64,000 nucleotides of DNA from Epithemia pelagica. Lineage: Eukaryota; Protista; Bacillariophyta. The DNA lies in contig OX337242.1 in NCBI GenBank assembly GCA_946965045.2, positions 434,001 to 498,000 of the forward strand, read 5' to 3'. The translations under genes were made by a program, and so were the position numbers. Shown piece after piece: positions 21,780 through 60,397 of the stretch (positions are counted from its first letter, which is position 1; each line of letters opens with the position of its first letter). Under the pieces are notes generated by a model. It was not told the DNA's origin and searched no databases. It worked only from the letters and a program-made list of their open reading frames with translations.

Positions 21780-21783
<4 letters not shown>

Positions 21784-31700: not shown

Positions 31701-33641
31701 ATGTCGCCATGGACGATGCGAAATCCGAGAACAAGCAGCAGCAGCAGCAGCAGCGCATCCATGAACCAAAGAAACGTTCCCCCTTCTTCTTCTTATTGTT
31801 GTTGGAGTAGAACTGGTCGTCGTCCTCGAGGTGCTGGTGCTTTCTCAGCATGCAACGACAACAAATGTTTCAAGTCGTCCTTGTATGACTGGACAAATCA
31901 TGAACGACCACGGCGTCGACATCGACCATCGTCGTTGGTCTGGAGAAGAGTCATTCTCTTGTTGGTATGGATCATGGTATTCCTGACGGGCAGTGTGGCA
32001 ATAAGTGGATTTCTTGTCCTTGTCACATGGGTCGATCCACTCATTGACGACTACAGCAGCAACAACAATGTGATGGCAACAGCAATATCATTCACAGGGA
32101 CACATCCAACGGTTGTCAAAGAGGAGGAGGAGGACGACTCACGAGCCGTAGTACCTCTGGTTTGTATCGAACACCATCAAGTCCAATCATGGCGCATTGT
32201 GCATCACGCTGCGACTGCCCATGGCGTGTTGAGTGTTCTGAATGCGTCCCTGTATTGTGGTGTTGGCACCCCAAAGATGAATTCATCCGTACTGCCCGAG
32301 CAAGAAGAACAACCACAACGACAACGACGACGAACCTTTCATCGATATTGGCAAGAAACAAAGCCAGTTGCACCGAATCATTATCATGATCAAGCACCAG
32401 AGTTCTTGCCTCGGGATGACGACATTCAAGCCCTCTATGGATCCAAGCCCGTGATTTTGCAACAGCACTGGGGTGGTGGTGGTGCTCGTCGTCCAACCAT
32501 GGCCGGCATGGAGACGGGGTGGTTGGGATCATGGTCGTCCAACCACAACGACAACGACAACAACGATCCCCCGTTTTTGGTGCCACACATTGTCGGCTTG
32601 TACAATTCCGGTACCAATGCCTTGGCCCAATTGTTGTATGCCAATTTCCCTCAATTGACCAAAACAACTGGAAGCGGCAGCTGCCAACACTCTACAAACC
32701 ATACGACGTCAACCATGGATATTGATTCCTACAAACATTATCCAAAATCCCTCCAACCGTTCTTTCACAACCAGCAGCAAACGAACGTGTTGCGTCTAGT
32801 CTTGGTGCGGGATCCCTATCGTTGGATGCAAAGTACCTGCCGCAGCCCGTACGATTTGATTTGGGTGTCTCATCACGACGACGAGCCGCCGATTCAACAA
32901 ACAAAGACAACGAAGGACCAACCGCCACCCGTGGTAGTTCCTCCACCCCATTACAACCGCAAGTGTTTGGATCGGTATCCTCCCCATTCGCAAGCTGGCG
33001 TGTCGTGGACCTTGGCATCCCCACCACCATCATCGGATATTACGAAGAACCATGAGGAGGGAGCGACTACTACTACTTCTACGAGTATTCCTAGTAGTAG
33101 TACTTTGACTATGCAGTATCCATCCTTGCCGCAACTGTGGAGTGGTTGGAATGGCGACTACATGGCACACAATGCCATGACTGCCTCCTCCTCCTCCCAA
33201 ACAGACATGCCTACCTTGGTGATTCGATTTGAAGATTTGCTTTTCCATGCAGATACTGTTTTGACTGCCATTGCCAATTGTACAGGATTGCAACGCACTG
33301 AAACACTGGTTTATCCCTGGAATCGCAGCAAAACACATGGCACCAACACCTATCGGTTAGAGACAATTCGACGACAACAGCGACACCACGGAAACGACAC
33401 ACTCCGTCCACCCAATGCATCTACCGCAAAAGCATCAACGCAATGGCCCCTGGGTGGCTTTGTCCACGTGTTGATGCAAACGGGACGCAAGGCCGGACGA
33501 TTGACAGGCTTGTCAGCGGGATTTTTCAATTATACGATACAGCAACACGGATTGGATGCCACTCTTCTGCATCAATTGCATTATTCCATCCCGACCTGGG
33601 AGGATTGGAAACAAGACAACCCATCATTTGACCCGAACTGA
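31701..33641 (+). CDS. Type-II membrane sulfotransferase-like protein (P-loop PAPS-binding fold)
   Basis: TM segment VILLLVWIMVFLTGSVAISGFLVLV; 5'-PSB GLYNSGTNAL; YKH; 3'-PB VLVRDPYRWMQSTCRSPY; YPSLPQLWSGWN; LVIRFEDLL. Confidence 0.85.
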   Translation: MSPWTMRNPRTSSSSSSSASMNQRNVPPSSSYCCWSRTGRRPRGAGAFSACNDNKCFKSSLYDWTNHERPRRRHRPSSLVWRRVILLLVWIMVFLTGSVAISGFLVLVTWVDPLIDDYSSNNNVMATAISFTGTHPTVVKEEEEDDSRAVVPLVCIEHHQVQSWRIVHHAATAHGVLSVLNASLYCGVGTPKMNSSVLPEQEEQPQRQRRRTFHRYWQETKPVAPNHYHDQAPEFLPRDDDIQALYGSKPVILQQHWGGGGARRPTMAGMETGWLGSWSSNHNDNDNNDPPFLVPHIVGLYNSGTNALAQLLYANFPQLTKTTGSGSCQHSTNHTTSTMDIDSYKHYPKSLQPFFHNQQQTNVLRLVLVRDPYRWMQSTCRSPYDLIWVSHHDDEPPIQQTKTTKDQPPPVVVPPPHYNRKCLDRYPPHSQAGVSWTLASPPPSSDITKNHEEGATTTTSTSIPSSSTLTMQYPSLPQLWSGWNGDYMAHNAMTASSSSQTDMPTLVIRFEDLLFHADTVLTAIANCTGLQRTETLVYPWNRSKTHGTNTYRLETIRRQQRHHGNDTLRPPNASTAKASTQWPLGGFVHVLMQTGRKAGRLTGLSAGFFNYTIQQHGLDATLLHQLHYSIPTWEDWKQDNPSFDPN

Positions 33642-33722
33642 GAATAACGCTTTCTTGTGTGTGTGGCAGTCATGAAATTGTTGGGAATGGAACCAATCTC
33701 TCTCTCCAGAGTAGTATTAATA

Positions 33723-36194: not shown

Positions 36195-39100
36195 ATGACG
36201 GACACGATTCCCTCCATGATTGTCTGGGTCGATGGCTGCGGAAGTACCAGTGGCCGAACCTTTGCTAGACATACCTATAATAATGAGGAGGAGGATGCTC
36301 CTCCGAAACGAAGAGGACAACGTCGTCCTCGACCAGGTACTGCTGCAACAACTACGACAGAGGAGCACGAGGAGAACCCGAAATCCTCGCAACCGGGAAA
36401 CACCACCACAACACCAACAACAACACCACTTACCAACCACCATTGCCACACGAATCATGCAGATGACAATGCATCCTCCTCTTCTTCGGAATCTGAAGTG
36501 GAACACGGCAACCAGCATCAACATTCCTCTTCCTCTTCTTCATCATCCTCGTCTTCTTCATCATTCTCCTCTTGTCGTCGTCGTCTAGCGACTCGCCGCA
36601 ATGTTCCTCGTTCCATTCCCTTGCGTTGGAAATTGGTACGCCAAGAACGATTTTCGTCCAAACAGCAACATCGAAATGCGGCGTCATTGTGTTGGACGGC
36701 CGCCACCTTGGCGTCGGCCCTCCAAAACCAACAACAACAAGAAGAAGAAGACGAACCACAACAAGAGCCGAAGCAAGAAGTCCCAATTGAGGTGATGCCG
36801 GCATTCGTTCCAACTCCAAGCAACCAGGCCGATACTCGCAATCCTCCAAAGGACAATAAACTTCCTCAAGACCAACAAGACAACGAGGAGGAAGAAGAAG
36901 ACGATGACATTTACGATGAAGATTATTATTTGAGCAATGGGGAGGACCACGACAATCTAGTAGATGAGCAACTAGAGGACGACGAAGAAGAAGAAACAGA
37001 AGAGGAAGAGGAAGATTCCGTCTCGGAGTATAGCGAATCACTGGCCGAGGCAAGTACCTTGGAAGATAGTACCAGTTATCGATTGTATGGAGACTCGGGC
37101 AATCGCAACAGCCATCGATTGTTTCCACCACCACCACACCGAGGAGCACGGCTCACATCGTGGTCCCATCACGAAACTACCCCTGCTACCAGGGCTACCC
37201 CTGCTACCTCTTCCCCTCGCCCGGCCACACGACGACTCTCGCAATCCTTTCACAACACTCCAGCCCCTCACCAGCAATTGAATGAGGAGTATCCCTCCCG
37301 ATCGTGCTACTCCACTCATGCAGCAGGAGGGGGTCGTCGTCGGGGTGGTCGTCGCAATGCGGCTGCTGTTGGTTTGCCGTTGGCATCCTGTCCAGCCGTG
37401 GTACGGTCCACGTCCTTTCAGCAACTCGAAACTCCCACCAACGGTTGTCCCACAACACCCACGCGCTTGTTTGCCTCCCAAGCCGTGGTCCTTTGTTCTT
37501 GCTCCGCATCGTCCTTGTCTGGTCAGTCGTCCTTGACCACACCTTCCTCCCTGGTACGACAATCCCCTGCTGCTGGTGCCGCTTGTCGGTGGAAGGGTCC
37601 CGAATCGGCCGCGACAACCACTCCACCCTTGGCGGGAACACGGCGGGCTTCAGTCGAACAAACCACTACCACTACTACACGAAATCCAACGGTGGACCAA
37701 ACAAAGGACGCTGCCAAAACCTCGGTGCGACAGTCTCCAGAACCAGAACCGACAACCACGACCACGGCATTGTTTCAAGTGTGCGAAAGTGACCATGAGG
37801 AGGATACTGAAAACATCACTAACAAGGAGAAACTCCCAACCGACATGGATCAAGTCTCTTCTTCTTCTCCTTCTCGAATCGAGCCACCCATGAGTCCACA
37901 ACAAGCACAACAACAACAACCACAAGGACAGGTACTACAGCAGCCACCACACTCGCACCACCAGGAAACGACCACGGTGACCACCACCACCACAACCACG
38001 ACACTGGTCTTTCCCCCCACCCCCACCTGCCCGTACCCCGTACCAGCGCAACGACGCAAAAAGACCACCGTGACTACAACGACTACTACCACTACGACTC
38101 CTTCTCCCAAACAACAGGCTACCGAGACGAAGAAGAACGACCAAAAGGAGGAGGAGAAACAAACGGACCGTGTCTCCTTGTCCTCCTGGTTGTCACCTCC
38201 CCCAAACAAGAGTCTCACCAAAGAGGATACGACTACTAGCATCGAAAAGAAAACCAAGACACAAGAGGAGGAAGAAGATGAGGATGACCAGAGCATTCAG
38301 TCCTTGACCAAGATTCACGAATCATGGAAGAATCATGCAACCACCCACAAGGGTGAACTCATGCAAGATCCATCCTGTTGCTGGGACAACAACAACAATC
38401 TCAAACTCATGATGGAACAGTATTGCTCGGCCACCTCCCTCATGACGGATGATTCCTCTACTATTTTCAGTACCAACGGTGGTGGTCCAACCACAACAAC
38501 AACATCAGCAGGGCGACAAGAACCACAACCAGAATCTTCGTCACCCAAGGAAACCGAAACAAATGCATCGTCACAGAACCCACCACAGCCATCCTCGGAC
38601 AGTTCACGGATTCCTATTCAACCATGTGGCAGGGTAACTCCTCCTCCTCAAGACAACGATCATGACAGGAGTTCCAAGGATGGATCGGGAGCCTCTACAT
38701 CTCCGTCTACCACAACGATTCAACTGCTTCAACGATTGGTGGCACCACCCTCCTCCTGTCCTACAGATGATGATATTCATGAGGAGGAGGGTATAGGCCT
38801 TTCTCGACAAGTCTCGGCCAAGTCCTTGGCAACTACCGAGTCGACCGCCACTGCAACCACAACCCTACCTCCCTCGTCGTCGTCTTATGAAGGTCCTTCG
38901 GCCAACTGTCGCACTTCAGTTGCTCCTCCTCCTCCTCTGTCTTCTCTGGGACCGTTGTCCTCCTCCTTTTCGAATAGTGCCGTCTCGAGCACCGACGGCT
39001 CGGCCCAGGAATGGAATACCCAACAGTCTCCAGAACCAGGGAACAGGAACCGTACCAATGGACGGCGGGATGTCACATCCCTTGCTTCATTCTCAAACTC

Positions 39101-40235
39101 TCCACCATTGTCATCGTCCAGTAACTCGTCTCGTGCCGGCCGAGTCACATCCCCTCGTATTCGCCGAACGTATGTATCGAGACATACAAACAACACGAAC
39201 AAGCTGTGGACCAGAAGTCAATCCTTGACATCGCCTCTGTCACATGTCGAACCCAACAACATGTCCATTGCCGCTCTCCGTAAGGGTGAAGAGAAGGCGC
39301 AAAAGGAAGAATCATGGACACTCCGAAACCCATCGACTCCTCAGTCCTCCTCTGGTGATTGTCGTGACAGTCTCAAGAAACCAACCAAGAAACCGTCCAA
39401 ACTAACGCAAGCACAACCAACAAAATCTCGACCACCTGCCGGTGGCCTTCGTCGTCGTCGACAAGTGCACTTTGCACCGGTAGAAGGAGGAGGACGAAAG
39501 GGCATCCCCCTTCTGACAATTCACGAATATACCCCACCCGAATCGGACGACCATGGACAACTGGATCCAGTCATTGGCTGTAGATCCAAAACCAAGGAGC
39601 AAGGTGATTTATTCTACAGTAGCAAGTTGGACAAACTCCTCAAGTGTACCAGCAACAAATTCACTCAAGTGGACACGTACTCCGCTGTAGATGACTGGGA
39701 CAAGTTTGATGAATGGTCGACAGGGAGCTCCTATGAAAGCATTGGTGATGGGAGTGTGGATGACTACTTTTCCAACCACCCCGGACGGTCTTTTGTGGAA
39801 ACTCACACGGATGAAACGGTACGAGCAGCCTGCAGGCTCGCCTTGACGCACTTGTACTTTTCGCATTCTCCCCGCGGGGATCAGTTGCAAAAGGATATTG
39901 TAGAAAACTCCTTGTCCGAATTGGACAAACTCTACGCACTTCCCTCATCTCGCAAATCAAATGGCAGGCGCAAGGGTAAGAAGGGACAATCCTTAGTGGA
40001 TGGAGAAGAAGATACCTTGCGTGGACTAGAAGCCTTGTTGTGCTTTCAAATGGTCCGTAACGTGCGTACGGCACATGTGCAAAACGTGCTTTCCACCGCG
40101 GCCCGCCAAAATGTCTCGGCTCCCAAGTTGCGTCAAGCATCGATGCAAACCTCACGTCCCTTTCGTCACATGGCGGTGCAAATGGCCAAATTCGATACAA
40201 GACAAGCACTCAAGGCGGTCTTGTTGAAATGGTAG
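36195..40235 (+). CDS. 1346-aa low-complexity hypothetical protein with a C-terminal helical domain (RGLEALL...AHVQNVL...LRQASMQTSRPFRHMAVQMAKFD)
   Basis: Single 4-kb stop-free ORF from ATG. The C-terminal motif resembles a widespread diatom family of unknown function. Confidence 0.8.
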   Translation: MTDTIPSMIVWVDGCGSTSGRTFARHTYNNEEEDAPPKRRGQRRPRPGTAATTTTEEHEENPKSSQPGNTTTTPTTTPLTNHHCHTNHADDNASSSSSESEVEHGNQHQHSSSSSSSSSSSSSFSSCRRRLATRRNVPRSIPLRWKLVRQERFSSKQQHRNAASLCWTAATLASALQNQQQQEEEDEPQQEPKQEVPIEVMPAFVPTPSNQADTRNPPKDNKLPQDQQDNEEEEEDDDIYDEDYYLSNGEDHDNLVDEQLEDDEEEETEEEEEDSVSEYSESLAEASTLEDSTSYRLYGDSGNRNSHRLFPPPPHRGARLTSWSHHETTPATRATPATSSPRPATRRLSQSFHNTPAPHQQLNEEYPSRSCYSTHAAGGGRRRGGRRNAAAVGLPLASCPAVVRSTSFQQLETPTNGCPTTPTRLFASQAVVLCSCSASSLSGQSSLTTPSSLVRQSPAAGAACRWKGPESAATTTPPLAGTRRASVEQTTTTTTRNPTVDQTKDAAKTSVRQSPEPEPTTTTTALFQVCESDHEEDTENITNKEKLPTDMDQVSSSSPSRIEPPMSPQQAQQQQPQGQVLQQPPHSHHQETTTVTTTTTTTTLVFPPTPTCPYPVPAQRRKKTTVTTTTTTTTTPSPKQQATETKKNDQKEEEKQTDRVSLSSWLSPPPNKSLTKEDTTTSIEKKTKTQEEEEDEDDQSIQSLTKIHESWKNHATTHKGELMQDPSCCWDNNNNLKLMMEQYCSATSLMTDDSSTIFSTNGGGPTTTTTSAGRQEPQPESSSPKETETNASSQNPPQPSSDSSRIPIQPCGRVTPPPQDNDHDRSSKDGSGASTSPSTTTIQLLQRLVAPPSSCPTDDDIHEEEGIGLSRQVSAKSLATTESTATATTTLPPSSSSYEGPSANCRTSVAPPPPLSSLGPLSSSFSNSAVSSTDGSAQEWNTQQSPEPGNRNRTNGRRDVTSLASFSNSPPLSSSSNSSRAGRVTSPRIRRTYVSRHTNNTNKLWTRSQSLTSPLSHVEPNNMSIAALRKGEEKAQKEESWTLRNPSTPQSSSGDCRDSLKKPTKKPSKLTQAQPTKSRPPAGGLRRRRQVHFAPVEGGGRKGIPLLTIHEYTPPESDDHGQLDPVIGCRSKTKEQGDLFYSSKLDKLLKCTSNKFTQVDTYSAVDDWDKFDEWSTGSSYESIGDGSVDDYFSNHPGRSFVETHTDETVRAACRLALTHLYFSHSPRGDQLQKDIVENSLSELDKLYALPSSRKSNGRRKGKKGQSLVDGEEDTLRGLEALLCFQMVRNVRTAHVQNVLSTAARQNVSAPKLRQASMQTSRPFRHMAVQMAKFDTRQALKAVLLKW

Positions 40236-40716: not shown

Positions 40717-42000
40717 ATGCAAAAGACGAACCGGGCCTCACAGCCCTCGTTTCCCATGCGATCCAAAGGGATGTGGGTCGTCCTGGGATGTGCCATGGCT
40801 GCCCTATGGATGATGATGTGTGATGAATGGGTGCTTCTCAAAATGTACTACAGCCAAGAAAACATGCCTCTCACACTCCATTACGTAAACCACACAGCAA
40901 ACAACAGCAACGAGAAGAAGAACCAAACAAGCAAGAAACAAGAAGTAAATGTTGTTTCTGATCCCCATGACACCAGAACGAACAAGACAACAACTCCAGA
41001 TTGGATTCTTCCCAATGTGTTACTGGCGGGGGTGCAAAAGTCAGGTACCACAGCCGTTTTCGAATATCTGAGACGAACGTTTGGAAGCCGAAACACGTCC
41101 ACTCCTACGCACGATCATCCCTTGTGTATTGCACGTATACTTCCTGGTATGAGACACTATCAAAACAAGGAACCTCATTTCTTTAATGATGTTTCCTTTC
41201 GTAAAGGCGTCTCTTATTATTCCAGTCTCTACGAACACTGTCAACCACAATCACCATCACCAGAGTTTACCCCACTCATACTGGATGCAACACCCAATTC
41301 ATTTACTCGAGCAGATCGTATCGCGCACTTTTACAAAACTCATGCCACACCAGAACAATTTCGCTCCCTAAAAATTCTCATCATTTTGCGGGAACCTGTG
41401 CAACGCGAATTGTCTTGGTACCATCATATGGAACGCGATATGGAGAAACACCTTCAGAAACACCTTCCTGACCAGGCACTCCCCAGTTATGTCCGTTCCC
41501 TTCGACGGCCTAACACAACCGATTCAAAAAATGAGACAACGATTGCTCCCTCACTTATCACCTTTGAAGAACGCATGAACCAATCAATTTTGCCCACCTT
41601 GATCAATGGACGGGGACCCAATAGGGAATTTTATAGTGTTTATGCACGCTGGGTAAAGGAATGGTTTCTTCACTTTGATCGATCGCAGCAAATTTTGTTA
41701 CTCAGCTACGACGAATTGAAGACGAATCCGCAGAGATTTGTGGAACGACTGCATGCCTTTCTGCAGCAACCACCACCGAAAGAAGAAAGCACTGGAAGCA
41801 GTCGCAATCGTGCTGTGGTGCCCCCGGCAAACTCTATACATGCCAAGGACCAAGACACGCCATCTTGTGAATTGCAGAAGAAGTGGTACGATATTTTTGA
41901 ACCATACAGTCAAGAATTTTACAAACTCTTGAATGCCAGTTCGGGTCCGCCTATGGAACAATCACCCTTTCCTCCTTTTCGATTTCGTTGCGCAACATAA
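40717..42000 (+). CDS. Type-II membrane sulfotransferase (heparan sulfate 3-O/N-sulfotransferase-like, Sulfotransfer_1 fold)
   Basis: TM segment WVVLGCAMAALWMMMC; PNVLLAGVQKSGTTAVFEYL; KEPHFF; DATPNSF; KILIILREPVQRELSWYHH; YARWVKEWF...ILLLSYDEL. Confidence 0.92.
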   Translation: MQKTNRASQPSFPMRSKGMWVVLGCAMAALWMMMCDEWVLLKMYYSQENMPLTLHYVNHTANNSNEKKNQTSKKQEVNVVSDPHDTRTNKTTTPDWILPNVLLAGVQKSGTTAVFEYLRRTFGSRNTSTPTHDHPLCIARILPGMRHYQNKEPHFFNDVSFRKGVSYYSSLYEHCQPQSPSPEFTPLILDATPNSFTRADRIAHFYKTHATPEQFRSLKILIILREPVQRELSWYHHMERDMEKHLQKHLPDQALPSYVRSLRRPNTTDSKNETTIAPSLITFEERMNQSILPTLINGRGPNREFYSVYARWVKEWFLHFDRSQQILLLSYDELKTNPQRFVERLHAFLQQPPPKEESTGSSRNRAVVPPANSIHAKDQDTPSCELQKKWYDIFEPYSQEFYKLLNASSGPPMEQSPFPPFRFRCAT

Positions 42001-47326: not shown

Positions 47327-48007
47327 GCCCTCAGTTAAAAATGTAATTTCACAGTGTCGATACTTTATTCCAAAGTAGACGAGTGCTATTAGTCCCTACA
47401 TGTAGTAGTCGCTATCCCTACTATCTACTACATAGTATCCTTTATCCTCTAGGAGGAGGAGTACTTGCTTGGCATCAAGTTTTTCTTGGCATCAAATTCT
47501 CTAAATTGCAATGTGGAAACCGCAAGTCTCAGATGCGATGACATTCTGACAAATCCAAGAAATATTACGAAGCAATGCGACGAGCGGATGATTTCTCGCA
47601 AGATACTGCAAGGTTCCTCACGTCTACACGAACACGTTTCCTTTCATTCGCTATCTCCACCTAACACCCACTCGTTGGTGATGCCACGGTTTGCTCGAAA
47701 ATCATGGTTGCTTCAACACGGATGGACGGATGGGTAGTCTCAGGTGACTGGAGGTTGCGTGAATCTCCTACGGGAACTTGTACTTATTTGGTTATCTTAC
47801 ACGGACCATGTGTGATGGAGAGCCTCGAAACAGCCAAACCGTATTACCATCCTACTTTGGCTCACAAATTCTGGTTTTTCAAACAAAAATTAGCAACAAC
47901 AACAACAATAGACTCAGGTAAGCCACCAAACTTGGACGATACTCATGATATCCCTGGGAGAAAGTCAATGAACTCACACATTGGTTGGCTTTTTATTTAG
48001 CAACACA

Positions 48008-51000: not shown

Positions 51001-51099
51001 GAGGTAGTGTCTTCGGATGAGGAACCGCACCGTAACGACATCAACTTCATGTATTGCCGTCCTACTCCGAATGAATTGCATGCGGGCCCCGGATTCTGA
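48008..51099 (+). CDS. Lipoxygenase-like protein fused to an N-terminal multi-pass membrane domain; introns 48698-48775, 49291-49386, 49560-49660
   Basis: The GTAAGT...CAAG intron (49560-49660) joins track ORFs 47981.. and 49774.. in frame. LOX motifs: KHLLELH (H-x4-H), HPLRIVLYIHL, VFPQVFAL, IRHHVYG; C-terminus ELHAGPGF. About 7-9 hydrophobic segments precede the LOX region. Confidence 0.8.
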
Positions 51100-51436: not shown

Positions 51437-54400
51437 TTACGGCGTCGTTGTTGCCGGTCGCCCTCCCCGTTGCATCCACAACAAGTGCATCAACAATGCC
51501 TTACTGGACGATCGACACGAATGTCCAGCTTGGCACAAACCGGCAATGGCATCGAGCAAAATATCCGACAAGTTGCCTTCAAAATCGTTCCGCAAAGAGT
51601 GGACCATGTCTTGTCCAATCCCAAAATCACGTTCCAGGGCTTGCCACAACAATATTTGGTCCTTGTTGTTGTTGCTTTGATTCTTGATCAGCCCATTGTG
51701 GGAGAACGGAATGGACGACCCGGACGATGACACGACATTGATCATACTCGTCGATGTCGGAGTACGGGCTCGAAGGGCCAAATATTGAGTCTGCTGGTCT
51801 GGTTTCTCGCCAGTGGCTTGGAAAGAGGGGTCCTCGTGAGTCGCTTTCGATTTCGGAGGAGCTTCTAGACCCCTCACACATGAATGTATCTTGTTTGGGA
51901 TATTGGGGTTGCTACTACCGTCGTTGTTGTTGTCAGCTGGACACGATGGGAGGGCTTGTCGAATGCGGTGATGTTCCTTGGTGGGCAAGGCCTCCATACC
52001 AGCCTTTACCTGAAATCCCATGGTCATGCCGACTGTTACGCATCCTTGCATGTCCTGTTCGCGGGACAACCATCCACCTTTTTCGTCCAATGAAAAGTTC
52101 ACGGATACAGGACTCATCGAGTTGCTTCCTCCTCGCAGAAAGGGCTCCTTATTGGACGACCCTGAAGAAAAAGACGAGGACAATGGCATGGTCGACGAGG
52201 ATTCAAACAGGGCTTGTTCTTGGTGGGGATTGTAGTAGCGCCAATCCACATAGTGATTGATGCACCAAACACGGACCGCATGATGCTGACTGCGCGATTG
52301 CGCCGAATAATGACCATAGACATCTCCCAAGGCGTGTCGGGCTTGCCATTGGATCAACTCAATAAAGCTGTGCGCCAAAGCATCGTCGGCATCCAATCGC
52401 GTCTCCAACAAGACACGATGCTGCGCCGCCTCATAATACGACAAGAGTACATGAGCGCTCCCATGCAGCAAAAAGTGGTCCACCGTGGACTGGTCGATTT
52501 GCTGCTGTTCGACATTTTTCTTTTTCTTCTTCGTCTTGTGCGACTGTCGGAGCAATCCATTCATGCCTTGTCGAAAATTCTCCTGGACGACATGGGTAGC
52601 TCCGACAATGACTGTTGGAGCCATGGTAGCAGTGTTGTTGTGTCCATGGTTCGTTTGAGCAGCAAACTCCACAATTTGAATCAATTCGTCCAACAAGGTT
52701 GAGTGCAAATCCGGATCGGTCCAAATTATCCACAAATACTGTCCATTGGTTTGCTGTCGCATACTGGGAACGGTAAAGGTCCGAAACAATTCCAAACGAG
52801 CACTAACAATAAAAATAGAATCATGATTTCATGTAAGTGAGGATAGGATTCCCAAGAGTGTGACCACAAACATCAAATCCATTCACACAGGCGCTGCCCA
52901 CTTTACGTACCGTCCCAAATGCAACAAATTGGGTTGATGTTGCATGAATCGGGTATGGACGACATGAACCAGATTGTACTTGTTGTTCCAGGTCGTTGTC
53001 GTAGTTGTTGTGGTTGTAACGGAACGTGTTCTCATCTCGGTAATGTCTTGTTGAGTGGTGGGTGTCGGAAGGAGAGGGGACTCTGCCCGTGTCTGTGCTG
53101 TGTTTCTATGATTGGTTGAATTCTGGAAGATGACTGTTGTCGTGGTCGTCGTCGCATTCATGTTCGACAGGGCTAAAGTGCTATTGGTTGCCGCATCATA
53201 CGGTCCTACGAGGGGATGGGGCGACGGAACTCCGAGGGGTGTAGTACGAGGTCCTTTGTCTTGTTGTTGTGGTGGTGGTTGTTGTTGTTCCACCACCACA
53301 CTCTGCCAGAGTTGCAGGACCGTGTCCCAATGCGGTCCTTGACACGCATGAGCTCCTTGTGGTTGCTGTTGTTGTTTGGAAAACATTCGAGACCATCGAG
53401 ACTGGATCCAAGTTGACAGAAACCCGTCGTTGTCATTGTTCTCCGTGTTTGCGGTCATTGTCGTGGTGGTCCATGGTCGACCCACTGGTGGCAGGCGAAA
53501 CGGGTCCACACCAGCACAGTTTGCTTCTTCTTGCTTTTGCTGTTGTTGTTGTTGAAAGCGTTGCACTTGTTGTTGAATCAAAGTGGCATTGAACCCATTG
53601 GACTGGATTGACCAGACCCAGGGTTGGACCTGTCGTTTGAGGGCCCGGGGAGAAATGCCAAACCGATGCGGCAAACTGGCAAACAAGGCATTTTGAAAGG
53701 GTTTCCAACCCGCACTAATGGCAATACCACTACTGCCGACAGGCAGCTGGCTCCTCATTCTTCCCTTGTTGTCTTTCTTGTCGTTTCGCACCATGCGTTC
53801 GTCATCGACCCCATGGTCATTGGGAGTGGTGTCGGGTGGTTCCACGACCTGGACCATTCCCACACGAGTCCAATCGTCCAGAGCGGGTGTCACGGCATGC
53901 AAGATTGAGTATTCCTCCTGTGTCCATCCCTCTATACTCCAATACTCCCAACAAGTAAAAGGACTACTCCCAGACGGATGGGATGTGGATGGAACCAACC
54001 CGGCCATGATGGTCGTCCACGAACTCCACGACACTCTCCTCATGGCGGTGGTGGCTTGTTGCCACCAGACACGTCCCATGGACCACATTGATGATGATGA
54101 TGATACTGGTACATGGCTGGATGCACTGGATCTAGGAATAGCGCTGTCACAAAAAGGTAGTTCCACCATGGTGGTGGTTCTGCTCCTCGTGCTGCTAGTG
54201 CTAACGGGGATCCAATCGTGCCACCACCACCAGTCGGCCCACCACGCCGGACTCATGAGCTCGTCCTTGATGTCATCGTTGTCTGGACGATTTCGAGAAG
54301 TACGACGACGACGAGGTTCCACCAACGAGGGTCGTTCCACGAATTGCAGCAACAACATCCGCATGGGTGGTTGTACTGGAGACGAAGGAGTGTCGACGTG

Positions 54401-56287
54401 TCCCTTGTTCTGCTTCGGTTGTTTGTGGTTCGTGTGGGACCACCACCACACAACAAACGGGTCGCTCGCGTGTTGCAGGGTATACGAGGCAGTCGGACTA
54501 GTTGTTCCAGCCGAGCGCGAAAAAGACGAAAAAGAAACAGGACTGGTGGACTTGTTGTCGTCGTTGTTGGCATTCGGCTCGGCTTCTTTTACCATCACAA
54601 CCTCCCTCCTCCTCCAGGCATGCGCCACGGTAACACCCGATTCCTCCAAATCACAACCGTATGGGTGGTGGTGGTGGTTCTTTGTTGTTGTTGGTTCCAA
54701 CAACATGCCTCGCGGATACATGGAATACTCCTCATTCATCTCATTATACAATGCCGATCTTGTGTTTCGTCGTTTCTGGTTCTTGTTGGCAGTCTTTGGC
54801 CATGGTTGAGCATGCCATTCCAATACAGCTGGTTGTTGTTGTTGCCCAGGAGAAGAAGGAGGAGGACACCACACGTGCCAAAACAGGCTCGTCTCCTTTG
54901 GTTTCGAACGAAAACGACCATGGGAATCCTCCTTGTCCTGCCAGACGGCCTCTTGGAATTGGACCTGAGCTTGCTGTTGCAAGGTTTCCAACACGACGGT
55001 CGACATTGCATGGGAAGCTTGCCACGTGGTGTGCAATTCCAGGCCGTACTGAATCCGGCAATCCTCCTTCGTGTGGGTCGTTTTTGTTGCGGTGGTCGTT
55101 GTGGTTGAGGCATCGCGTCGTGACGAACCCCCATACTGCTGCTCTTCGGTATCGAATAAAATGTCTTGGTGGTGTGGAACAGACTCATGACTGGTTGTCC
55201 TTGTCCTTGCGCTCGGTGGTGGCGATTGGAACAAGAAAGGATCTCGAGCTCGTTGCACCACCACACGCAGCAATGAATGGTCCACCCACAAGGGCCGGTC
55301 CGTATCCTTCGTATCGTTATTCTTGTCGTGGTTCAAAGGCAAGACGTTGGTAAACCAGGTTTGGACGGCTTGCAGTGTCTCACGAACCTCGTCGTCGTCG
55401 TCGTTGTTCTCGTCCTTGTCCTGGTCGACACGAATCCATACAATATAGGTATGAAACCAACGTGGTGGATGCTCCGTGTGATTGTCGTTGTTGGTATGAT
55501 TGTCGTCGTTGTCGTTCTTGTCCTTGTTCTTCGGAAAGGCCAATAGAACTGCCGTTTGATGGACGAAACTGGACCACGCCATTGTCTTCCACAGGTGCAA
55601 TCGAGTCTGCACCACGGCGGGAAATCGTCCAACGGAGGGCAGGGTCAAGGGAACATGAAGGACATGATGATGATAATGATGATATTGACATTGATATGAA
55701 ACAAGGGAATCTGGACGAGACGGATCCTGGCTGGTGGTGGTAGAGTCACTGGTGGTGGTGGTGGTGGTGGTTGTCGTCCCACGGATCCTGCGGTCCTGGC
55801 TCTTACTTTTTCCATACCACCCTCCATTCCCAACCAACAAAAGGACGGCAAGGACGAGGAGGAGCCCGAGGCGCACCAGCCGCTGCCGCCGCCCACGGCC
55901 AGGACCACAATCGGGAGGACAACAACGACCAGACGCCCCTGCTGGTGCATGCCAAAAAAGGGTGCGAACCGTCTTGTCGTAGAAGTGATTGGTATTATGG
56001 CATGGGTCTGTTTGTTGCGTCCTGGTGGTGGCGGTCCTCCTGCTGCTCCACCAACCACCATCACCCGGACAGTGCCAGTGTTGTGTGAGACTGCCGCTCT
56101 TGTGGTGGTTGTTGCTGTTGCTGGTGGTGGCTGCTGCCGCCGCCGCCACCAATGGGTCGGCCTCCTTGGGTAGTGCAATTACGGGAGGAGAAACCACAGC
56201 AACCGACGGTACTACGGTCGTCCTTGTCCTTGGAACCGTTCTTGCCCTTGTGGTATTTTTACGGACACGAGGAGTCGTCCTGACCAT
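51437..56287 (-). CDS. About 1580-aa type-II membrane protein with a putative rhamnosyltransferase-like (GT-A) domain plus a degenerate upstream copy; exons 56287-52911 and 52802-51437
   Basis: A 108-nt GTACGT...TTAG intron restores VVHTRFMQHQPNLLHLGR|ARLELFRTFTVPSMRQQT...YLWIIWTDPDL...LLETRLDADDAL...VWC. TM segment LVRLGLLLVLAVLLLVG. Confidence 0.82.
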
Positions 56288-56769
56288 GATGATGGTACGG
56301 ATCGCTTTGTAGACAGTCGGCAACCGCGCTTTGTTGTTGTGTGTGTGTTGTTTTGGAAATGGTCGTAGTTGTGTTTGTTGGTTTGATACAGAGAAAGAGA
56401 GACGGGAGAGAATAGGGTGGTTGTTTATAGTCCACACATGCCACCGAGAGAAAACTCGCGTGTGCGATAAGAGGAGCAAGGAAGGGTCTTCTTCCTTCCT
56501 CTACACACACAACATGCCTTGCTTTCTGGGGACTGGAAGTAAGCAGTCGAGAGAGGATTCCCACTTTCCACATCTTTCTCTAGAGAAAAGAGACGGCTGC
56601 CACACTGCTCACACAGCCAAACGGAACGAGGCGGAGGAGAAAGATGAGCCATGTGTGTCTCACCGGATGACACACCCACAACCCACATACACACACCCAC
56701 ATTCTGTGCGGCACAACCAATCCTCACAAAACCAAAGAGAAGCGTGTATGTGTGTGTGTGTGTGAGAGA

Positions 56770-56872: not shown

Positions 56873-57415
56873 ACTCCGAAAATAAAGGGGCAGAGCGGTC
56901 GGTCGGAACTCGGAACGCCCCTCCATTTTTGGGGGGTGCCGGGATGGCCGCTTCTGAGTCGCTCCAAAGTGTGTGGTCAGTGACGGTGTCAAAGGTTATG
57001 TTGCCGCGAATTCTGCATGGAGGAGTCGCACAAAAAATGTTGGACCGTCACACGGGGGGGGGGGTCATTTTTCTTAAATATCTCGATGGGACGACGACAA
57101 GAGCTGTGGGCAGAGAACGAAATACAAAAAGAGACTACCTCGTAGGTCCAACAAGAACAAGACAACAACATTCAAGAGAAACACTGCTAGTAACAAAGAG
57201 ATAGGCTCGAAAAAGAAACAAGCGTGAAATCAAGAGAGAGAGGTGCCTCTCGCTCGTTGTATGTATATACCGGTGCCATTACCCATCACATACAGTTACT
57301 CCTCAACAACAAACCCACCCGAGAATCCACGCTCGCTCTCCTGGGGACCGAACCACACGCCACCAAACGGTCCTTCTTTCGAACGACCCATGACCAAACC
57401 AACCACAACAGACTC

Positions 57416-60397
57416 ATGACGCAGACACTGCCGCCACAACAATCGTTTTCCTGGAACAAGAAGCAGACCACCACCACCACCAAGCCAACCATCACCATCC
57501 AAGAGGATGATGGAGACGTACCAACACACCAACGACGACGAAAACCACAAAGACGACGACGACGTGGGCTAGTTTTATTCCCTGGACGTCAACCACAATA
57601 CGGTCCTGGTTATTGTTCCATGGTATCTATTAGTTTGGGAATCCTGGGTCTGGGTATGGTCTTGACTCAAGTCTTTACCTCCCTGCACCTGGCCTCGTCA
57701 ACCTACACGACCATCTCCTTGGCCATGAATGTCTTGGTCGTCCCCGAAGAATCCATGCTCGTCTTGTTGCAATCACAACAACAACAATCACAACCACCAC
57801 TGCCATCTCCCTCTATTGTATCCAATAACAACCACAACCACAACTACACGTTTCATCCCTATCGCATTCCTCCCAATCGTACCACCCATGCCTCGTCGTG
57901 GGCCTGTCCGGGATGTCATTGGACCGTCATTGGCAATCCCAAACATGGTGTCACATGTGGTACCAAATGGCATCAATGGATCACCAAACAACAACAACAA
58001 CAACAACAACGTTCCAACCCCAACGAGCTGCCACACTCAGGCCATCGTCCGGCCAACCTCACAGCTGCGACTGCGGTGTTTGCTTCGTGGAAGGGTGGCA
58101 ATCGGACGAGCAGCCTGCACTTGCCGGTAGTAGACCAAGACAACCATACCAACAACAACAACAACAAAAATGACGATTGGGGGTTGGAGTGGCAATCGTA
58201 TATCGTCCTCAGTCAACAACACAGCGAATGTACCCGTCCCTGCAATCCTTGGACCTGTCGTCATCCACTCCAAGAATCATCCTTGGCAACCAAACAAGGC
58301 CCTGCAACCGCAAGGAACAACAACACATCCAGCAGCACGACACGGCTGGACTCGGTATCTCCTCCGGATGGTGATTCTTCTGTTGTATCCTCCTCGTCAC
58401 CATCATCGTCATCACAACAACCACAGTCGTCCAGGATGATTCGACAACAGCAGTATTGGTATTGGAATGCCACCATTCCGCAATTTGTCCAAGCCCGGAC
58501 CTATCCCTCCTTGTCGTGTTTGCCAGCCCATGCTCGCTTTCAATCGCACTATCAAACCGCCGACGAATTGCAACAGGCCATGGAAACGGGAGCCTTCAAC
58601 ATTACGCAATACTTGGATGAGGCCTGGCAGTTTCCATTGACGAGTACCAAGAACCAACCATCCAACGAAACAGTTGACGGCAACACCCGTGAACATTCTG
58701 CATCATCCTCACAACAACAACCACCACCACAACAACACTTTGGATTGGACGAGATTCAACGACGCCGCACACATATTTTTGTCGAATACAATCCCACACT
58801 GACGCGGTTGCCCAACAATTGGAATCACTACAAAACAACAACGACAGCGGGTGATACGAATTATAATGAGGATGACAATGACCCAAACAATCCCATTACC
58901 TACTTGGCTTCCTTTCGTGTTACTCCCTGGCAATCCTGTTTGCCCTGGTTCAATTATACCGAAACCTTTGCCCGTCTGCAATGGGAACAATTTCGGAATA
59001 TCAATGCCTTGGGATTGGCATTGGTCCGGGCCGATTTGAGCTTGGTGCAGGAAAGTACAACGGTTGTGCCTTTGGAATCTGCTCTCCGATCACGAGCGGT
59101 ATCCTCCTTTCGTGGACAATATGTCGATTATCGATTGCAAACCCTCTATTATGACCCTTTTTTGTCCTCTTCGTCCAACCACGAGGAACAACCACAAGAA
59201 GGACACTTGTATCTCAATATCAATGGTCCTCCCGTTCATCTTCTTCCCATTCGCATTGCGTGGAATCCTCACCACCACCACCACCGTGAGGATGCACCAC
59301 CACAACCCACCAATTCGTGGATGCGCATCCATCCCTGGTATGGAGAAAGCGAGGCCCTCTCCTTGTTTGTCTCCAAGACAGTGTATCGATTTCAGGATAG
59401 AAACGGCAAAAATTATGCCATTTTTCAAACGCCAGCAGTCGTATCTCGTGGCGGTGTTGGTGCCGCTGCTGGTACTTCTTCTACCTCCTCCCAGCATCCA
59501 CAAATGTCCGACACTCTCACGGTGGAATACAATATTTGGGGACCACGCCGAGTCCAATCCGTTCGTCTTCCTACCCAGCACTTGGACAATCATGACAACA
59601 CGGAAACAAAGAAAAAGGAGGGATGGGTTGTGGATTCTGGTCAACGGCATGGCAGTGTGGTCATGCAATCCATGGAGCCAACTACGGATATTGTGACGGA
59701 TGACAACTTGACTTTGGATCACAAGGTACCGCCCTCTTCCTTTGCCACGGTCGATGAATTGTGGTTCCCCCAACATCCCGTATTTAAGGTTGCTCCACAT
59801 GGAGGTGCCTGTTGTGTTCCGCTGCCAATCTCCAAGTCTGCCCGTCACCAAATCTTTCAGTTTCGGCATCCCAATGGCACATCCAGTAGTAGTAGTCAAA
59901 ATACGACCACCATGGAGGATACCCCGTATGATACAATCATGGTGGGTGTCGGTCATACCAAAGTGCCGCATCGTCCTTGGATGAAACAACCCAAACATGC
60001 CGAACGCGTCAAGGATCACCCGCCTCATCAATATGTTTCTTTTTTCTATGCCCTCGAACCCGTCCCTCCATTGTATCGCGTCGTGGCTCGATCCGGTACC
60101 TTTTGTTTGCCCTGGGCCCTTTCCGAAACCGAACGCGAAACCAATGCCCGTACCTGGTGGAGCACGTGGAAACCCCTCAATTTGAAACGACAAGAGTTTG
60201 CTCCCTGTCCCGAAATTTCCTTTGTCACGGGAATTCTTCCCCATGCCACCATCCCACATCATGTCATTGTCACCTACGGTGTCAATGATTGTACCTCCCA
60301 TGTCATTGTGCTGCACGAACAAGAAATTCTTCGTCTGCTTTTTGACGGCATGGACGACGACGACCATGACAACAATGACGAAGAGTCTCACGTTTGA
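57416..60397 (+). CDS. About 993-aa type-II membrane protein with a probable five-bladed beta-propeller glycosidase/glycosyltransferase-like domain
   Basis: TM segment ISLGILGLGMVLTQVFTSL; motifs FVEYNPTL, GKNYAIF, PHGGACC, GVGHTK, YVSFFYALEPVPPLYRVVARSGTFCL, EISFVTGI...VIVTYGVNDC. The terminal blade resembles GH130/Bmt-type propellers. Confidence 0.65.
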   Translation: MTQTLPPQQSFSWNKKQTTTTTKPTITIQEDDGDVPTHQRRRKPQRRRRRGLVLFPGRQPQYGPGYCSMVSISLGILGLGMVLTQVFTSLHLASSTYTTISLAMNVLVVPEESMLVLLQSQQQQSQPPLPSPSIVSNNNHNHNYTFHPYRIPPNRTTHASSWACPGCHWTVIGNPKHGVTCGTKWHQWITKQQQQQQQRSNPNELPHSGHRPANLTAATAVFASWKGGNRTSSLHLPVVDQDNHTNNNNNKNDDWGLEWQSYIVLSQQHSECTRPCNPWTCRHPLQESSLATKQGPATARNNNTSSSTTRLDSVSPPDGDSSVVSSSSPSSSSQQPQSSRMIRQQQYWYWNATIPQFVQARTYPSLSCLPAHARFQSHYQTADELQQAMETGAFNITQYLDEAWQFPLTSTKNQPSNETVDGNTREHSASSSQQQPPPQQHFGLDEIQRRRTHIFVEYNPTLTRLPNNWNHYKTTTTAGDTNYNEDDNDPNNPITYLASFRVTPWQSCLPWFNYTETFARLQWEQFRNINALGLALVRADLSLVQESTTVVPLESALRSRAVSSFRGQYVDYRLQTLYYDPFLSSSSNHEEQPQEGHLYLNINGPPVHLLPIRIAWNPHHHHHREDAPPQPTNSWMRIHPWYGESEALSLFVSKTVYRFQDRNGKNYAIFQTPAVVSRGGVGAAAGTSSTSSQHPQMSDTLTVEYNIWGPRRVQSVRLPTQHLDNHDNTETKKKEGWVVDSGQRHGSVVMQSMEPTTDIVTDDNLTLDHKVPPSSFATVDELWFPQHPVFKVAPHGGACCVPLPISKSARHQIFQFRHPNGTSSSSSQNTTTMEDTPYDTIMVGVGHTKVPHRPWMKQPKHAERVKDHPPHQYVSFFYALEPVPPLYRVVARSGTFCLPWALSETERETNARTWWSTWKPLNLKRQEFAPCPEISFVTGILPHATIPHHVIVTYGVNDCTSHVIVLHEQEILRLLFDGMDDDDHDNNDEESHV

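What the first reader, a model, noticed from the sequence alone, without database searches (positions are those of the whole stretch)
31701..60397. Candidate sulfated-glycan (EPS/mucilage) biosynthesis gene cluster
Seen: of the eight intact genes between 31.7 and 60.4 kb, six encode predicted type-II membrane glycan-modifying enzymes from five different families. These are two different sulfotransferase types (31701, 40717), two GT7 galactosyltransferase-like paralogs, a rhamnosyltransferase-like protein, and a propeller glyco-enzyme transcribed head-to-head with it. Established: raphid diatoms secrete sulfated, Gal/Rha/Man/Fuc-containing EPS for adhesion and gliding, and the biosynthetic genes are poorly defined. 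Inference: this may be a physically clustered pathway for a sulfated polysaccharide or proteoglycan.
Basis: partly seen in the sequence, partly recalled or inferred. Interest (0 to 1): 0.78.

Follow-up and report, generated by a model that had tools for sequence, protein, structure and literature searches.

The report
Diatom island of Golgi glycan enzymes
Six of eight neighbouring genes in this diatom-type stretch do encode membrane-anchored sugar-adding or sulfate-adding enzymes, which looks like more than chance, but whether they form one pathway for a sulfated slime polymer is unproven and the arrangement is mostly not shared with other diatoms.

Summary
Between 31.7 and 60.4 kb, six of eight genes encode single-anchor (type II) glycan-type enzymes:
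- a Sulfotransfer_1 enzyme;
- two GT7 paralogs;
- a PF11316 "rhamnosyltransferase-like" GT;
- a protein with no Pfam match but a sulfotransferase fold (Z 11.8);
- a protein with no Pfam match but a GH130/GT108-type five-bladed propeller (Z 19.8).

Two introns were found. One is confirmed by an RNA-like contig.

The density is far above the local background: 1-2 glycan genes among about 56 neighbouring genes, giving a post hoc binomial of 4e-6 to 1.4e-4.

The "one pathway" reading is only partly supported. There is no expression series. Five other GT7 loci lack these partners. About 20 other loci with propeller homologs have ordinary neighbours.

One real echo exists. In Mayamaea, the same sulfotransferase-fold family and the propeller family lie 1.7 kb apart, beside two GT13 genes and an EamA transporter. 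Propeller homologs also sit next to a GT (GT13, GT32 or PF11316) more often than I would expect.

The families are expanded, and first readers flagged several other sulfotransferase-plus-GT neighbourhoods elsewhere in this genome. Those notes are unchecked.

Verdict: a real, lineage-specific island of Golgi glycan enzymes. A shared substrate is plausible but not shown.

The parts
31701..33641 (+). Type II membrane protein with a sulfotransferase fold. It belongs to an unannotated diatom family ('ST_A'). The 5'-PSB loop reads GLYNSGTNA, with Asn where Lys/Arg is expected. The RDP motif (LVRDPYRWMQS) is kept.
   Evidence: No Pfam or PDB sequence match. Ten homologs, motifs invariant. AF2 model pLDDT 62.5. 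VIA Z 11.8 to 4gbm and 3ap3, and all 50 top entries are sulfotransferases. hhalign places the loop on KSGTT of the neighbouring Sulfotransfer_1 gene. Atlas features 0.95 to sulfotransferase clusters. TM segment at residues 84-102.
36195..40235 (+). Intervening gene: a 1346-aa low-complexity Ser/Thr/Pro/Glu-rich protein with no hydrophobic anchor. I do not count it as part of the enzyme set.
   Evidence: No Pfam match. No TM segment. The ORF is kept in the second haplotype at 96% amino-acid identity.
40717..42000 (+). Sulfotransfer_1 enzyme with canonical 5'-PSB (QKSGTT) and 3'-PB (LREPVQRELS) motifs. It converges on GT7a.
   Evidence: PF00685 at 4e-16, 59.6 bits against a cut-off of 22. Nearest solved relatives are heparan sulfate 3-O-sulfotransferases and NDST, E 1e-4 to 2e-3. 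Motifs read from the translation.
42284..43821 (-). GT7a, a beta-1,4-Gal/GalNAc-transferase-like gene. Exon 1 is 43821-42619, the intron is 42618-42479 (140 nt, GT..AG), and exon 2 is 42478-42287 with the stop at 42286-42284. DVD and WGWEDSD motifs are present.
   Evidence: PF13733 plus PF02709. B4GALT1 at 2.8e-27. The GT7 HMM hits the downstream ORF 42287-42574 at 2e-26, and the splice sites were read in the sequence. The same layout is present in haplotype L003.
44901..46517 (-). GT7b, a tandem paralog of GT7a (58% identity over the catalytic domain). DVD and YGFEDDD motifs are present. The true start is probably an internal Met.
   Evidence: PF13733 plus PF02709. blastp between the paralogs. 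The database model of the allele is 422 aa. In the tree the pair falls in a lineage-specific group.
47981..51099 (+). Intervening gene(s): a multi-pass membrane ORF (47981-49777) followed by a 441-aa ORF (49774-51099). Another first-reader note calls this a lipoxygenase fusion. It is not part of the enzyme set.
   Evidence: No Pfam match for either ORF. Five hydrophobic segments in the first ORF. Note s1-226441, not tested further.
51437..56479 (-). PF11316 ('putative rhamnosyltransferase') GT-A-like gene, a long type II protein. Exon 2 is 52802-51437, the intron is 52910-52803 (108 nt), and exon 1 ends at 52911 and runs up within ORF 52883-56479. The TM segment is at ORF residues 201-219. A DADD motif lies in exon 2.
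   Evidence: PF11316 at 4.8e-8, 33 bits against a cut-off of 23. Ten homologs all hit PF11316. The family HMM covers positions 49-111 at the end of the upstream ORF (iE 4e-16), with weak colinear traces further up. Splice sites read. A contig of run X4 skips exactly 52803-52910. Long homologs of 1400-1800 aa carry the domain at the C-terminus.
57224..60397 (+). Type II membrane protein with a Cys-rich stem and a C-terminal GH130/GT108-like five-bladed beta-propeller. It is head-to-head with the PF11316 gene. The database model starts at 57620.
   Evidence: No Pfam or PDB sequence match. Family alignment with invariant NP, R, GGACC and YG.NDC motifs. AF2 pLDDT 71, pTM 0.79. Foldseek best hit Leishmania MPT-4, E 1.8e-3, prob 0.98. 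VIA Z 19.8 over 281 residues to 5b0p. Atlas features point to GH130/DUF1861 clusters. The 5' end is present in the RNA-like run X4.

Best explanation
This is a real, lineage-specific genomic island of six Golgi-type (single N-terminal anchor, lumenal catalytic domain) glycan-modifying enzymes.

Shown: the enzyme classes, the anchors, the gene structures and the unusual density.

Inferred:
- The enzymes sit in the secretory pathway and decorate secreted or cell-surface glycoconjugates.
- GT7a and GT7b add beta-linked Gal or GalNAc from a UDP-sugar.
- The PF11316 GT-A enzyme adds a further sugar of unknown identity.
- The propeller acts as a GT108-like, inverting beta-mannosyl-type transferase, or as a trimming enzyme.
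- The Sulfotransfer_1 enzyme, and possibly the sulfotransferase-fold protein, transfers sulfate from PAPS.

I think it most likely that some of the six share substrates. The best candidates are the divergent PF11316/propeller pair and the convergent sulfotransferase/GT7 pair. I do not think the island is a conserved, operon-like pathway cluster. It looks assembled in this lineage from expanded enzyme families.
For: - Enzyme assignments: Pfam, fold matches, solved relatives, catalytic motifs read from the translations.
- Anchors.
- Transcription and splicing of the PF11316 gene, and presence of the propeller 5' end, in the RNA-like run X4.
- Density against local background: no glycan gene among the 10 long ORFs of window positions 5-31 kb that I scanned, and 1-2 among about 44 neighbours of four other GT7 loci of the same genome. 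Binomial 4e-6 to 1.4e-4.
- Partial echo elsewhere. The Mayamaea locus L008 has two ST_A-family genes, a propeller-family gene (tblastn 1.4e-23), two GNT-I genes and an EamA transporter in about 15 kb, bounded by ordinary genes.
- Propeller homologs lie next to GT32 (L009, Gly_transf_sug 2.8e-8) and GT13 (L011, L014, L016/L017).
- Precedent for small glycan-related microsynteny with a sulfotransferase in brown algae (PMC11468063), and for a biosynthetic cluster in diatoms (the dab genes, PMC11499653).
Against: - There are no co-expression data. No run on record as RNA was served, and the contigs cannot rank expression.
- The gene set is not conserved. Two propeller paralogs in another diatom assembly stand alone among transposons.
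- 26 immediate neighbours of propeller homologs in 16 metagenome loci are generic apart from one sulfatase; the one GNT-I neighbour (L017) was scanned in addition.
- Family HMMs find no GT7, PF11316 or ST_A gene beside any propeller homolog except in Mayamaea.
- Five other GT7 loci have no sulfotransferase partner.
- Two unrelated genes are interleaved, and the orientations are mixed.
- The ST_A protein lacks the catalytic Lys/Arg of the 5'-PSB loop, so it may not sulfate anything.
- The enrichment test is post hoc and local, not genome-wide.
Confidence: 0.5

Rival explanations
1. Coincidental neighbourhood. Sulfotransferases and Golgi glycosyltransferases are large, fast-duplicating families in this genome, so some windows will hold several unrelated members. 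The genes here act on different substrates and share no regulation.
For: - At least 8 GT7 paralogs in the same genome, some in tandem.
- 437 representative PF11316-like proteins in the library.
- Sulfotransferase domains are reported as expanded in diatoms (PMC10328945).
- First readers noted at least five other sulfotransferase-plus-GT neighbourhoods in this genome (unchecked).
- No conservation of the set in other taxa.
- Two unrelated genes are interleaved.
Against: - Five different families in eight consecutive genes is far above the local background.
- The independent Mayamaea island shares two families that are otherwise rare and unannotated.
- Repeated sulfotransferase-plus-GT neighbourhoods could equally mean a genuine genome-wide tendency to cluster.
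Confidence: 0.33
2. A true co-regulated biosynthetic cluster. All six enzymes act in sequence on one sulfated extracellular polysaccharide or mucin-like proteoglycan used for adhesion or gliding.
For: - Same topology for all six.
- Complementary activities: three GT classes plus two sulfotransferase types.
- A head-to-head pair with an intergenic region of about 0.75-1.1 kb, and a convergent sulfotransferase/GT7 pair with 284 nt between stop codons.
- The Mayamaea island also carries a candidate sugar-nucleotide-type transporter, EamA.
- Diatoms exude sulfated mannan (PMC13063451).
Against: - No expression or genetic evidence.
- No nucleotide-sugar synthesis, transporter or export gene in this window.
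- The set is not syntenic in the other diatoms examined.
- The ST_A protein lacks a key catalytic residue.
- Sugar specificities are unknown.
Confidence: 0.15

Closest known systems
Brown-algal microsyntenic group FK-GFPP + sulfotransferase + hydrolase (candidate fucan synthesis; PMC11468063)
   Same: It is a small physical group of glycan-related genes that includes a sulfotransferase, in a stramenopile nuclear genome. Its function is inferred from co-location.
   Different: That group is conserved across several brown-algal orders. The present set is not conserved as a whole. The families differ too: there is no fucose salvage enzyme here, and GT7, PF11316 and a propeller are present instead.
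dab domoic-acid biosynthetic gene cluster of Pseudo-nitzschia (PMC11499653)
   Same: It is a precedent that diatom nuclear genomes can hold a compact cluster of non-homologous enzymes of one pathway.
   Different: The dab genes are co-expressed, biochemically proven and make a small molecule. Here nothing is proven beyond co-location, and the products would be glycans.
GH130 beta-mannoside phosphorylases and GT108 Leishmania mannosyltransferase/phosphorylases (PDB 5b0p, 9erg, 6q4y; PMC12814180)
   Same: The five-bladed beta-propeller matches over the whole catalytic domain: Z 19.8 and about 16, with 270-300 residues aligned.
   Different: There is no sequence-level match to PF04041 or to any solved chain. 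The protein is twice as long, with large insertions. It has an N-terminal membrane anchor and a Cys-rich stem, so it is predicted to be lumenal. To my knowledge (not checked here) the known enzymes are soluble cytosolic or bacterial proteins. Donor and linkage are unknown.
Animal Golgi glycosaminoglycan machinery (B4GALT7/B4GALT1-type GT7 enzymes with heparan sulfate 3-OST/NDST-type sulfotransferases)
   Same: The nearest solved relatives of GT7a are B4GALT1 and B4GALT7, and those of the Sulfotransfer_1 gene are heparan sulfate 3-OST and NDST. Both are type II enzymes, and the catalytic motifs are kept.
   Different: The similarity is weak for the sulfotransferase (E about 1e-4). To my knowledge (not checked here) the animal genes are not physically clustered. 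No xylosyltransferase or polymerase is present here.
Tyrosylprotein sulfotransferase and the CurM/olefin-synthase sulfotransferase domains
   Same: They are the best structural matches of the 31701 protein: Z 11.8 and 11.2-11.8, about 200 residues.
   Different: There is no sequence-level match. The 5'-PSB Arg/Lys is replaced by an invariant Asn. Invariant WGKH and RFEDLLFH motifs are specific to the diatom family.

Membership tests
Sulfotransfer_1 (PF00685), gene 40717-42000 | Profile match above the curated cut-off | tested here: met
   59.6 bits against a cut-off of 22, E 4e-16
Sulfotransfer_1 (PF00685), gene 40717-42000 | 5'-PSB loop K-[ST]-G-T-T and 3'-PB R-x-P...S motifs for PAPS binding | tested here: met
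   GVQKSGTTAV and ILREPVQRELS read in the translation
PAPS-dependent sulfotransferase superfamily, gene 31701-33641 | Sulfotransferase fold | tested here: met
   VIA Z 11.8, rmsd 3.5, 202 residues to 4gbm. All 50 top entries are sulfotransferases. Foldseek E is only 0.27. Model pLDDT is 62.5.
PAPS-dependent sulfotransferase superfamily, gene 31701-33641 | Sequence-profile membership in a curated sulfotransferase family | tested here: not met
   No Pfam family at E <= 0.01. A Mayamaea homolog gives only Sulfotransfer_4 at E 0.028, below its cut-off.
PAPS-dependent sulfotransferase superfamily, gene 31701-33641 | Basic residue (Lys/Arg) in the 5'-PSB loop | tested here: not met
   The loop is GLYN[ST]GTNA, with Asn invariant in 12 domain sequences. 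hhalign puts this Asn on the Lys of KSGTT.
GT7 (Glyco_transf_7N/7C), genes GT7a and GT7b | Both Pfam halves above cut-off, DXD metal site, and the acidic E-D-D catalytic stretch | tested here: met
   DVD in both genes, WGWEDSD in GT7a and YGFEDDD in GT7b. B4GALT1 at 2.8e-27.
GT7, donor and acceptor specificity (Gal versus GalNAc) | Measured sugar transferred | not testable with these tools
   The nearest non-diatom hits in the protein database are insect beta-1,4-GalNAc-transferases (bre-4), while the nearest solved structures are the galactosyltransferases B4GALT1/B4GALT7. The specificity is therefore open.
Rhamno_transf (PF11316), gene 51437-56479 | Profile match above the curated cut-off | tested here: met
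   33.2 bits against a cut-off of 23, but only profile positions 41-86 match in exon 2. Ten homologs score 27-56 bits. Exon 1 supplies the preceding part. The joined protein was not searched.
Rhamno_transf (PF11316), gene 51437-56479 | Rhamnose as the transferred sugar | not testable with these tools
   The Pfam name itself says 'putative'. No characterised relative was recovered.
GH130 / GT108, gene 57224-60397 | Five-bladed beta-propeller of the GH130/GT108 type | tested here: met
   Z 19.8 (5b0p), 19.2 (9erg) and about 16 (6q4y, 2b4w). GH43/GH32 propellers score only 12-14.
GH130 / GT108, gene 57224-60397 | Sequence-profile membership (PF04041 or a significant match to a member) | tested here: not met
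   No Pfam family for any of 10 members. The family profile finds no PDB chain at E <= 10.
GH130 / GT108, gene 57224-60397 | Catalytic Asp and phosphate/GDP-binding basic residues | tested here: inconclusive
   A nearly invariant D-x-R (D219, R221) and invariant N-P, R, H..K positions exist in the family alignment. No residue-level superposition was available to equate them with the GH130 residues.
Biosynthetic gene cluster (one pathway) | Non-homologous enzymes physically adjacent beyond chance | tested here: met
   Five families in eight genes. Local background is 1-2 of about 56 genes. Binomial 4e-6 to 1.4e-4. This is post hoc and not genome-wide.
Biosynthetic gene cluster (one pathway) | Co-expression of the members | not testable with these tools
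   No run on record as RNA. Only contigs were served, and one RNA-like run.
Biosynthetic gene cluster (one pathway) | Conservation of the arrangement in related species | tested here: inconclusive
   The whole set was not found elsewhere. The ST_A and propeller families are co-located in Mayamaea. A second haplotype at 97-98% identity keeps the order, which is trivial.

The most novel reading that the evidence does not exclude
The sulfotransferase-fold family and the membrane-anchored GH130/GT108-like propeller family form a recurrent module in raphid diatoms. With whichever GTs lie beside it (PF11316 and GT7 here, GT13 in Mayamaea), the module builds a sulfated, mannose-containing extracellular glycan. 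This would be the first glycan biosynthetic gene cluster described in a microalga and the first Golgi-lumenal propeller-type mannosyltransferase.
Probability: 0.15. Interest if true: 0.8.

Novelty: new variant of a known kind. Interest (0 to 1): 0.55.

Why it matters
Diatom extracellular polymers, including sulfated mannans, feed marine bacteria and glue cells to surfaces. The enzymes that make them are essentially unknown.

This locus gives a short, testable list of candidates. It also brings out two families that current annotation misses:
- a sulfotransferase-fold family with an unusual active-site loop;
- a membrane-anchored propeller related to beta-mannoside phosphorylases and transferases, with relatives on 65 environmental contigs (taxa not determined) and a haptophyte-labelled nearest cluster in the Atlas.

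If even the pairwise links hold (propeller with the adjacent GT, sulfotransferase with GT7), they give entry points for knockouts. If the clustering proves general in this genome, it would show that Golgi glycan enzymes can be organised in islands in a unicellular alga.

Tried and rejected
- Sequence searches of the 31701, 57224 and 49774 proteins against solved structures found nothing. The same held for the family profiles A2 and A4.
- Pfam on all ten propeller-family members found nothing.
- Synteny by way of propeller homologs in a second diatom assembly showed no partner genes within 10 kb.
- Synteny by way of GT7 homologs was weak. Most hits turned out to be paralogs in the same genome. 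Epithemia has only a GT7 pair.
- A metagenome scan returned 65 propeller loci. tblastn and family HMMs found none of the window's other families there.
- The search for RNA runs returned none on record. The four runs served are contigs from one study, so expression levels cannot be compared.
- I considered the 1346-aa low-complexity protein as a mucin-like substrate encoded in the island. I rejected this because it has no signal or anchor segment.
- The GT7 tree did not date the island. GT7a and GT7b sit in a lineage-specific grade without Epithemia orthologs.
- I did not identify the species. The tools code or hide its name.
Full report
**What is there**

The window reads as diatom-type nuclear DNA (GC about 0.49, compact genes, short introns). 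Its proteins have their nearest named relatives in Mayamaea, Epithemia and Attheya.

Pfam confirms four of them outright:
- Sulfotransfer_1 for 40717-42000 (4e-16).
- Glyco_transf_7N plus 7C for 42529-43821(-).
- Glyco_transf_7N plus 7C for 44901-46517(-).
- Rhamno_transf PF11316 for 51437-52795(-) (4.8e-8, above its cut-off).

**The 31701 protein**

It belongs to a small family with no Pfam family on record. The only members with a taxon label are Mayamaea and Attheya, both diatoms. The family has invariant motifs GLYN[ST]GTNA, WGKH, LVRDPYRWMQSMC and RFEDLLFH.

An AlphaFold model built on that alignment has mean pLDDT 62.5, and the core is confident. Foldseek returns mostly sulfotransferases near the top (30 of the first 30), at weak E-values. 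The second-look aligner gives Z 11.8 over about 200 residues to the CurM sulfotransferase domain and TPST2, and all 50 listed entries are sulfotransferases. Atlas features agree.

One caveat is important. hhalign places GLYNSGTNA on the QKSGTTA loop of the neighbouring Sulfotransfer_1 gene. The Lys/Arg that contacts the 5'-phosphosulfate in canonical enzymes is therefore an invariant Asn in this family. Whether the family is active, or uses the invariant Lys-His of WGKH instead, is open.

**The 57224 protein**

It also belongs to an unannotated family. The proteins have an anchor, a Cys-rich stem and a C-terminal domain of about 640 residues with invariant NP, R, GGACC and YG.NDC motifs.

The model has pLDDT 71 and pTM 0.79. 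Foldseek's best hits are Leishmania MPT-4 (E 1.8e-3, prob 0.98) and GH130 phosphorylases. The second look gives the following:
- Z 19.8 (281 residues) to beta-1,2-mannobiose phosphorylase.
- Z 19.2 to the Uhgb_MS mannoside synthase.
- About 16 to the GT108 enzymes.
- Only 12-14 to GH43/GH32 propellers.

It is thus a GH130/GT108-type five-bladed propeller, but not a sequence-level member. According to PMC12814180, the GH130/GT108 fold supports phosphorylase, hydrolase and GDP-Man-dependent transferase chemistry. As far as I know (from my own knowledge, not from that paper), the described members are soluble. A membrane-anchored, predicted lumenal version would therefore be new to me. I found no paper that mentions GT108 together with diatoms.

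**Gene models**

The PF11316 gene has a 108-nt GT..AG intron at 52910-52803. A contig of run X4 skips exactly these 108 bases (CT..AC on the + strand), so X4 behaves as RNA and the splice is real.

The family HMM continues into the end of the upstream ORF 52883-56479 (positions 49-111, iE 4e-16). It leaves weak colinear traces of a degenerate first domain further up. The closest homologs are 1400-1800 aa with the domain at the C-terminus. The gene is therefore a protein of about 1,590 aa, with its anchor at ORF residues 201-219.

GT7a has a 140-nt intron (42618-42479) and a second exon ending at 42284. The GT7 HMM hits the downstream ORF at 2e-26, and the joined reading matches GT7b residue for residue across the junction.

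**Catalytic motifs and topology**

- The Sulfotransfer_1 protein has KSGTT and R-E-P...S.
- The GT7 pair has DVD and the E-D-D stretch.
- The PF11316 domain has DADD.
- Five of the six proteins have one clear N-proximal hydrophobic segment, and the Sulfotransfer_1 protein has a weaker one.
- The nearest solved relatives are heparan sulfate 3-OST/NDST for the sulfotransferase and B4GALT1/B4GALT7 for GT7a.

**Is it more than chance?**

I could not scan the genome, so I used local controls.
- The 10 long ORFs of window positions 5-31 kb that I scanned hold no glycan enzyme. They include an inositol-phosphatase-like gene, a weak PB1 hit, two Kelch genes and proteins with no match.
- Four other GT7 loci of the same genome (85 kb, about 44 genes of 150 aa or more) hold one GT4 and one epimerase-like gene.

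At that background (0.02-0.06), finding four glycan enzymes among the six non-GT7 genes has a binomial tail of 4e-6 to 1.4e-4. Multiplied by a generous 250 seed genes, it stays below 0.04. The test is post hoc, but the enrichment looks real.

Against over-reading it:
- The families are expanded. There are at least 8 GT7 copies here and 437 representative PF11316-like proteins in the library. Sulfotransferase domains are reported as expanded in diatoms (PMC10328945).
- First readers flagged several other sulfotransferase-plus-GT neighbourhoods on other pieces of this genome. Those notes are unchecked. They could mean a high background or a genuine genome-wide habit of clustering.

**Synteny**

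A contig of another assembly (L003) is 97-98% identical and keeps the order. It is an allele or a near-identical strain, so this is no independent support.

Beyond that, the set is not conserved:
- Two propeller paralogs in another diatom assembly lie alone among transposon genes.
- Epithemia shows only a GT7 pair.
- A metagenome scan gave 65 propeller loci. tblastn and family HMMs found no GT7, PF11316 or ST_A gene in them.
- 26 immediate neighbours in 16 loci are ordinary apart from one sulfatase.

Two things point the other way.

First, Mayamaea pseudoterrestris has a second island. It holds an ST_A gene, a triple-domain ST_A gene, a COPI-associated-like gene, a propeller-family gene (tblastn 1.4e-23), two GNT-I (GT13) genes, an unknown gene and an EamA transporter. 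These are consecutive over about 15 kb and bounded by ordinary genes. The two families that have no Pfam model, and for which I recovered only a few relatives, are thus co-located in two distant raphid diatoms.

Second, propeller homologs sit directly beside a GT in several independent settings:
- PF11316 here.
- GT32, head-to-head, on scaffold L009 (Gly_transf_sug 2.8e-8).
- GT13 on L011, L014 and L016/L017.

By my own rough reckoning (no script), that is about 4 independent cases among roughly 45 neighbours, where I would expect fewer than one.

**How it most likely works**

Shown: six secretory-pathway-type enzymes of five families are encoded side by side, at least two of them are transcribed, and one splice is confirmed.

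Inferred: they modify secreted or surface glycoconjugates in the Golgi.
- The GT7 enzymes add beta-linked Gal or GalNAc.
- The PF11316 enzyme adds an unidentified sugar.
- The propeller acts as a GT108-like mannosyl-type transferase, or as a trimming enzyme.
- The Sulfotransfer_1 enzyme sulfates a carbohydrate.
- The role of ST_A is uncertain.

I rate the explanations as follows:
- "A real island, with some members sharing substrates": 0.5.
- "Pure coincidence of expanded families": 0.33.

**Comparison with known systems and novelty**

Known precedents are the conserved FK-GFPP/sulfotransferase/hydrolase microsynteny of brown algae (PMC11468063) and the dab cluster of Pseudo-nitzschia (PMC11499653). 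I found no paper that describes a glycan gene cluster in a diatom.

The locus is therefore a new variant of a known kind, and its functional claim is still open. The two unannotated families are the most solid new items. Sulfated alpha-mannan (PMC13063451) and beta-mannan (PMC9860051) are reported from diatoms and give the propeller a plausible product. That link is speculation.

**Rule compliance**

- Spliced models were handled exon by exon, by reference.

Noticed in passing
window 26215-27285 (+) and 29908-30975 (+): Two stand-alone Kelch propeller genes, 84% identical, lie just upstream of the island. They match the large hypervariable Kelch family that other notes describe elsewhere in this genome.
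   Followed up: partly
L008 (Mayamaea pseudoterrestris BROI01000002.1) 8394-23178: A second glycan-enzyme island. It holds two genes of the sulfotransferase-fold family (one with three tandem domains, 1079 aa), a COPI-associated-like gene, a propeller-family gene, two GNT-I genes, an unknown gene and an EamA transporter. Ordinary genes bound it on both sides.
   Followed up: yes
L009 7494-12121 (metagenome scaffold; same arrangement in L010): A GT32-type gene (Gly_transf_sug 2.8e-8) is head-to-head with a propeller-family gene. This mirrors the PF11316/propeller pair of the window, with a different GT family.
   Followed up: partly
L053 1850-7266: A sulfatase gene (PF00884, 2e-16) lies directly downstream of, and convergent with, a long propeller-family gene on a metagenome contig.
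   Followed up: no
L011, L014, L016, L017: GNT-I (GT13) homologs of the Mayamaea gene (50-54% identity) lie next to propeller homologs on four environmental contigs. The GT13/propeller adjacency is therefore shared by several uncultured relatives.
   Followed up: partly
window 53718-54809 (+), 54218-55108 (+) against 52883-56479 (-): Long ORFs run on both strands and in several frames across the low-complexity stem region of the PF11316 gene. In the RNA-like run X4, contigs are sparse over 53.6-55.2 and 55.6-57.0 kb. The exact 5' extent of the transcript is therefore not settled.
   Followed up: partly
window 51400-57400 against L003, and runs X1-X3: A second sequence version at 97-98% identity exists (L003). 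The DNA-like runs X1-X3 show variants at about half depth. This suggests two diverged haplotypes in one strain.
   Followed up: no
proteins P0048-P0050 (PF11316-like, 1431-2369 aa): Some relatives of the rhamnosyltransferase-like protein carry many tandem copies of the domain, with up to 13 matched stretches in one 2369-aa protein.
   Followed up: no
L078 7876-11354 (same genome, ctg1285l): The GT7 copy closest to GT7a (73% identity) is split into two frames (321 + 138 aa). This is either a frameshift or an intron like the one in GT7a. It lies 1.2 kb from a GT4-type gene.
   Followed up: no
window 47981-51099 (+): The membrane ORF and the following 441-aa ORF overlap by ATGA in different frames, and neither has a Pfam match. 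Another note reads them as a lipoxygenase fusion, which I did not test.
   Followed up: no
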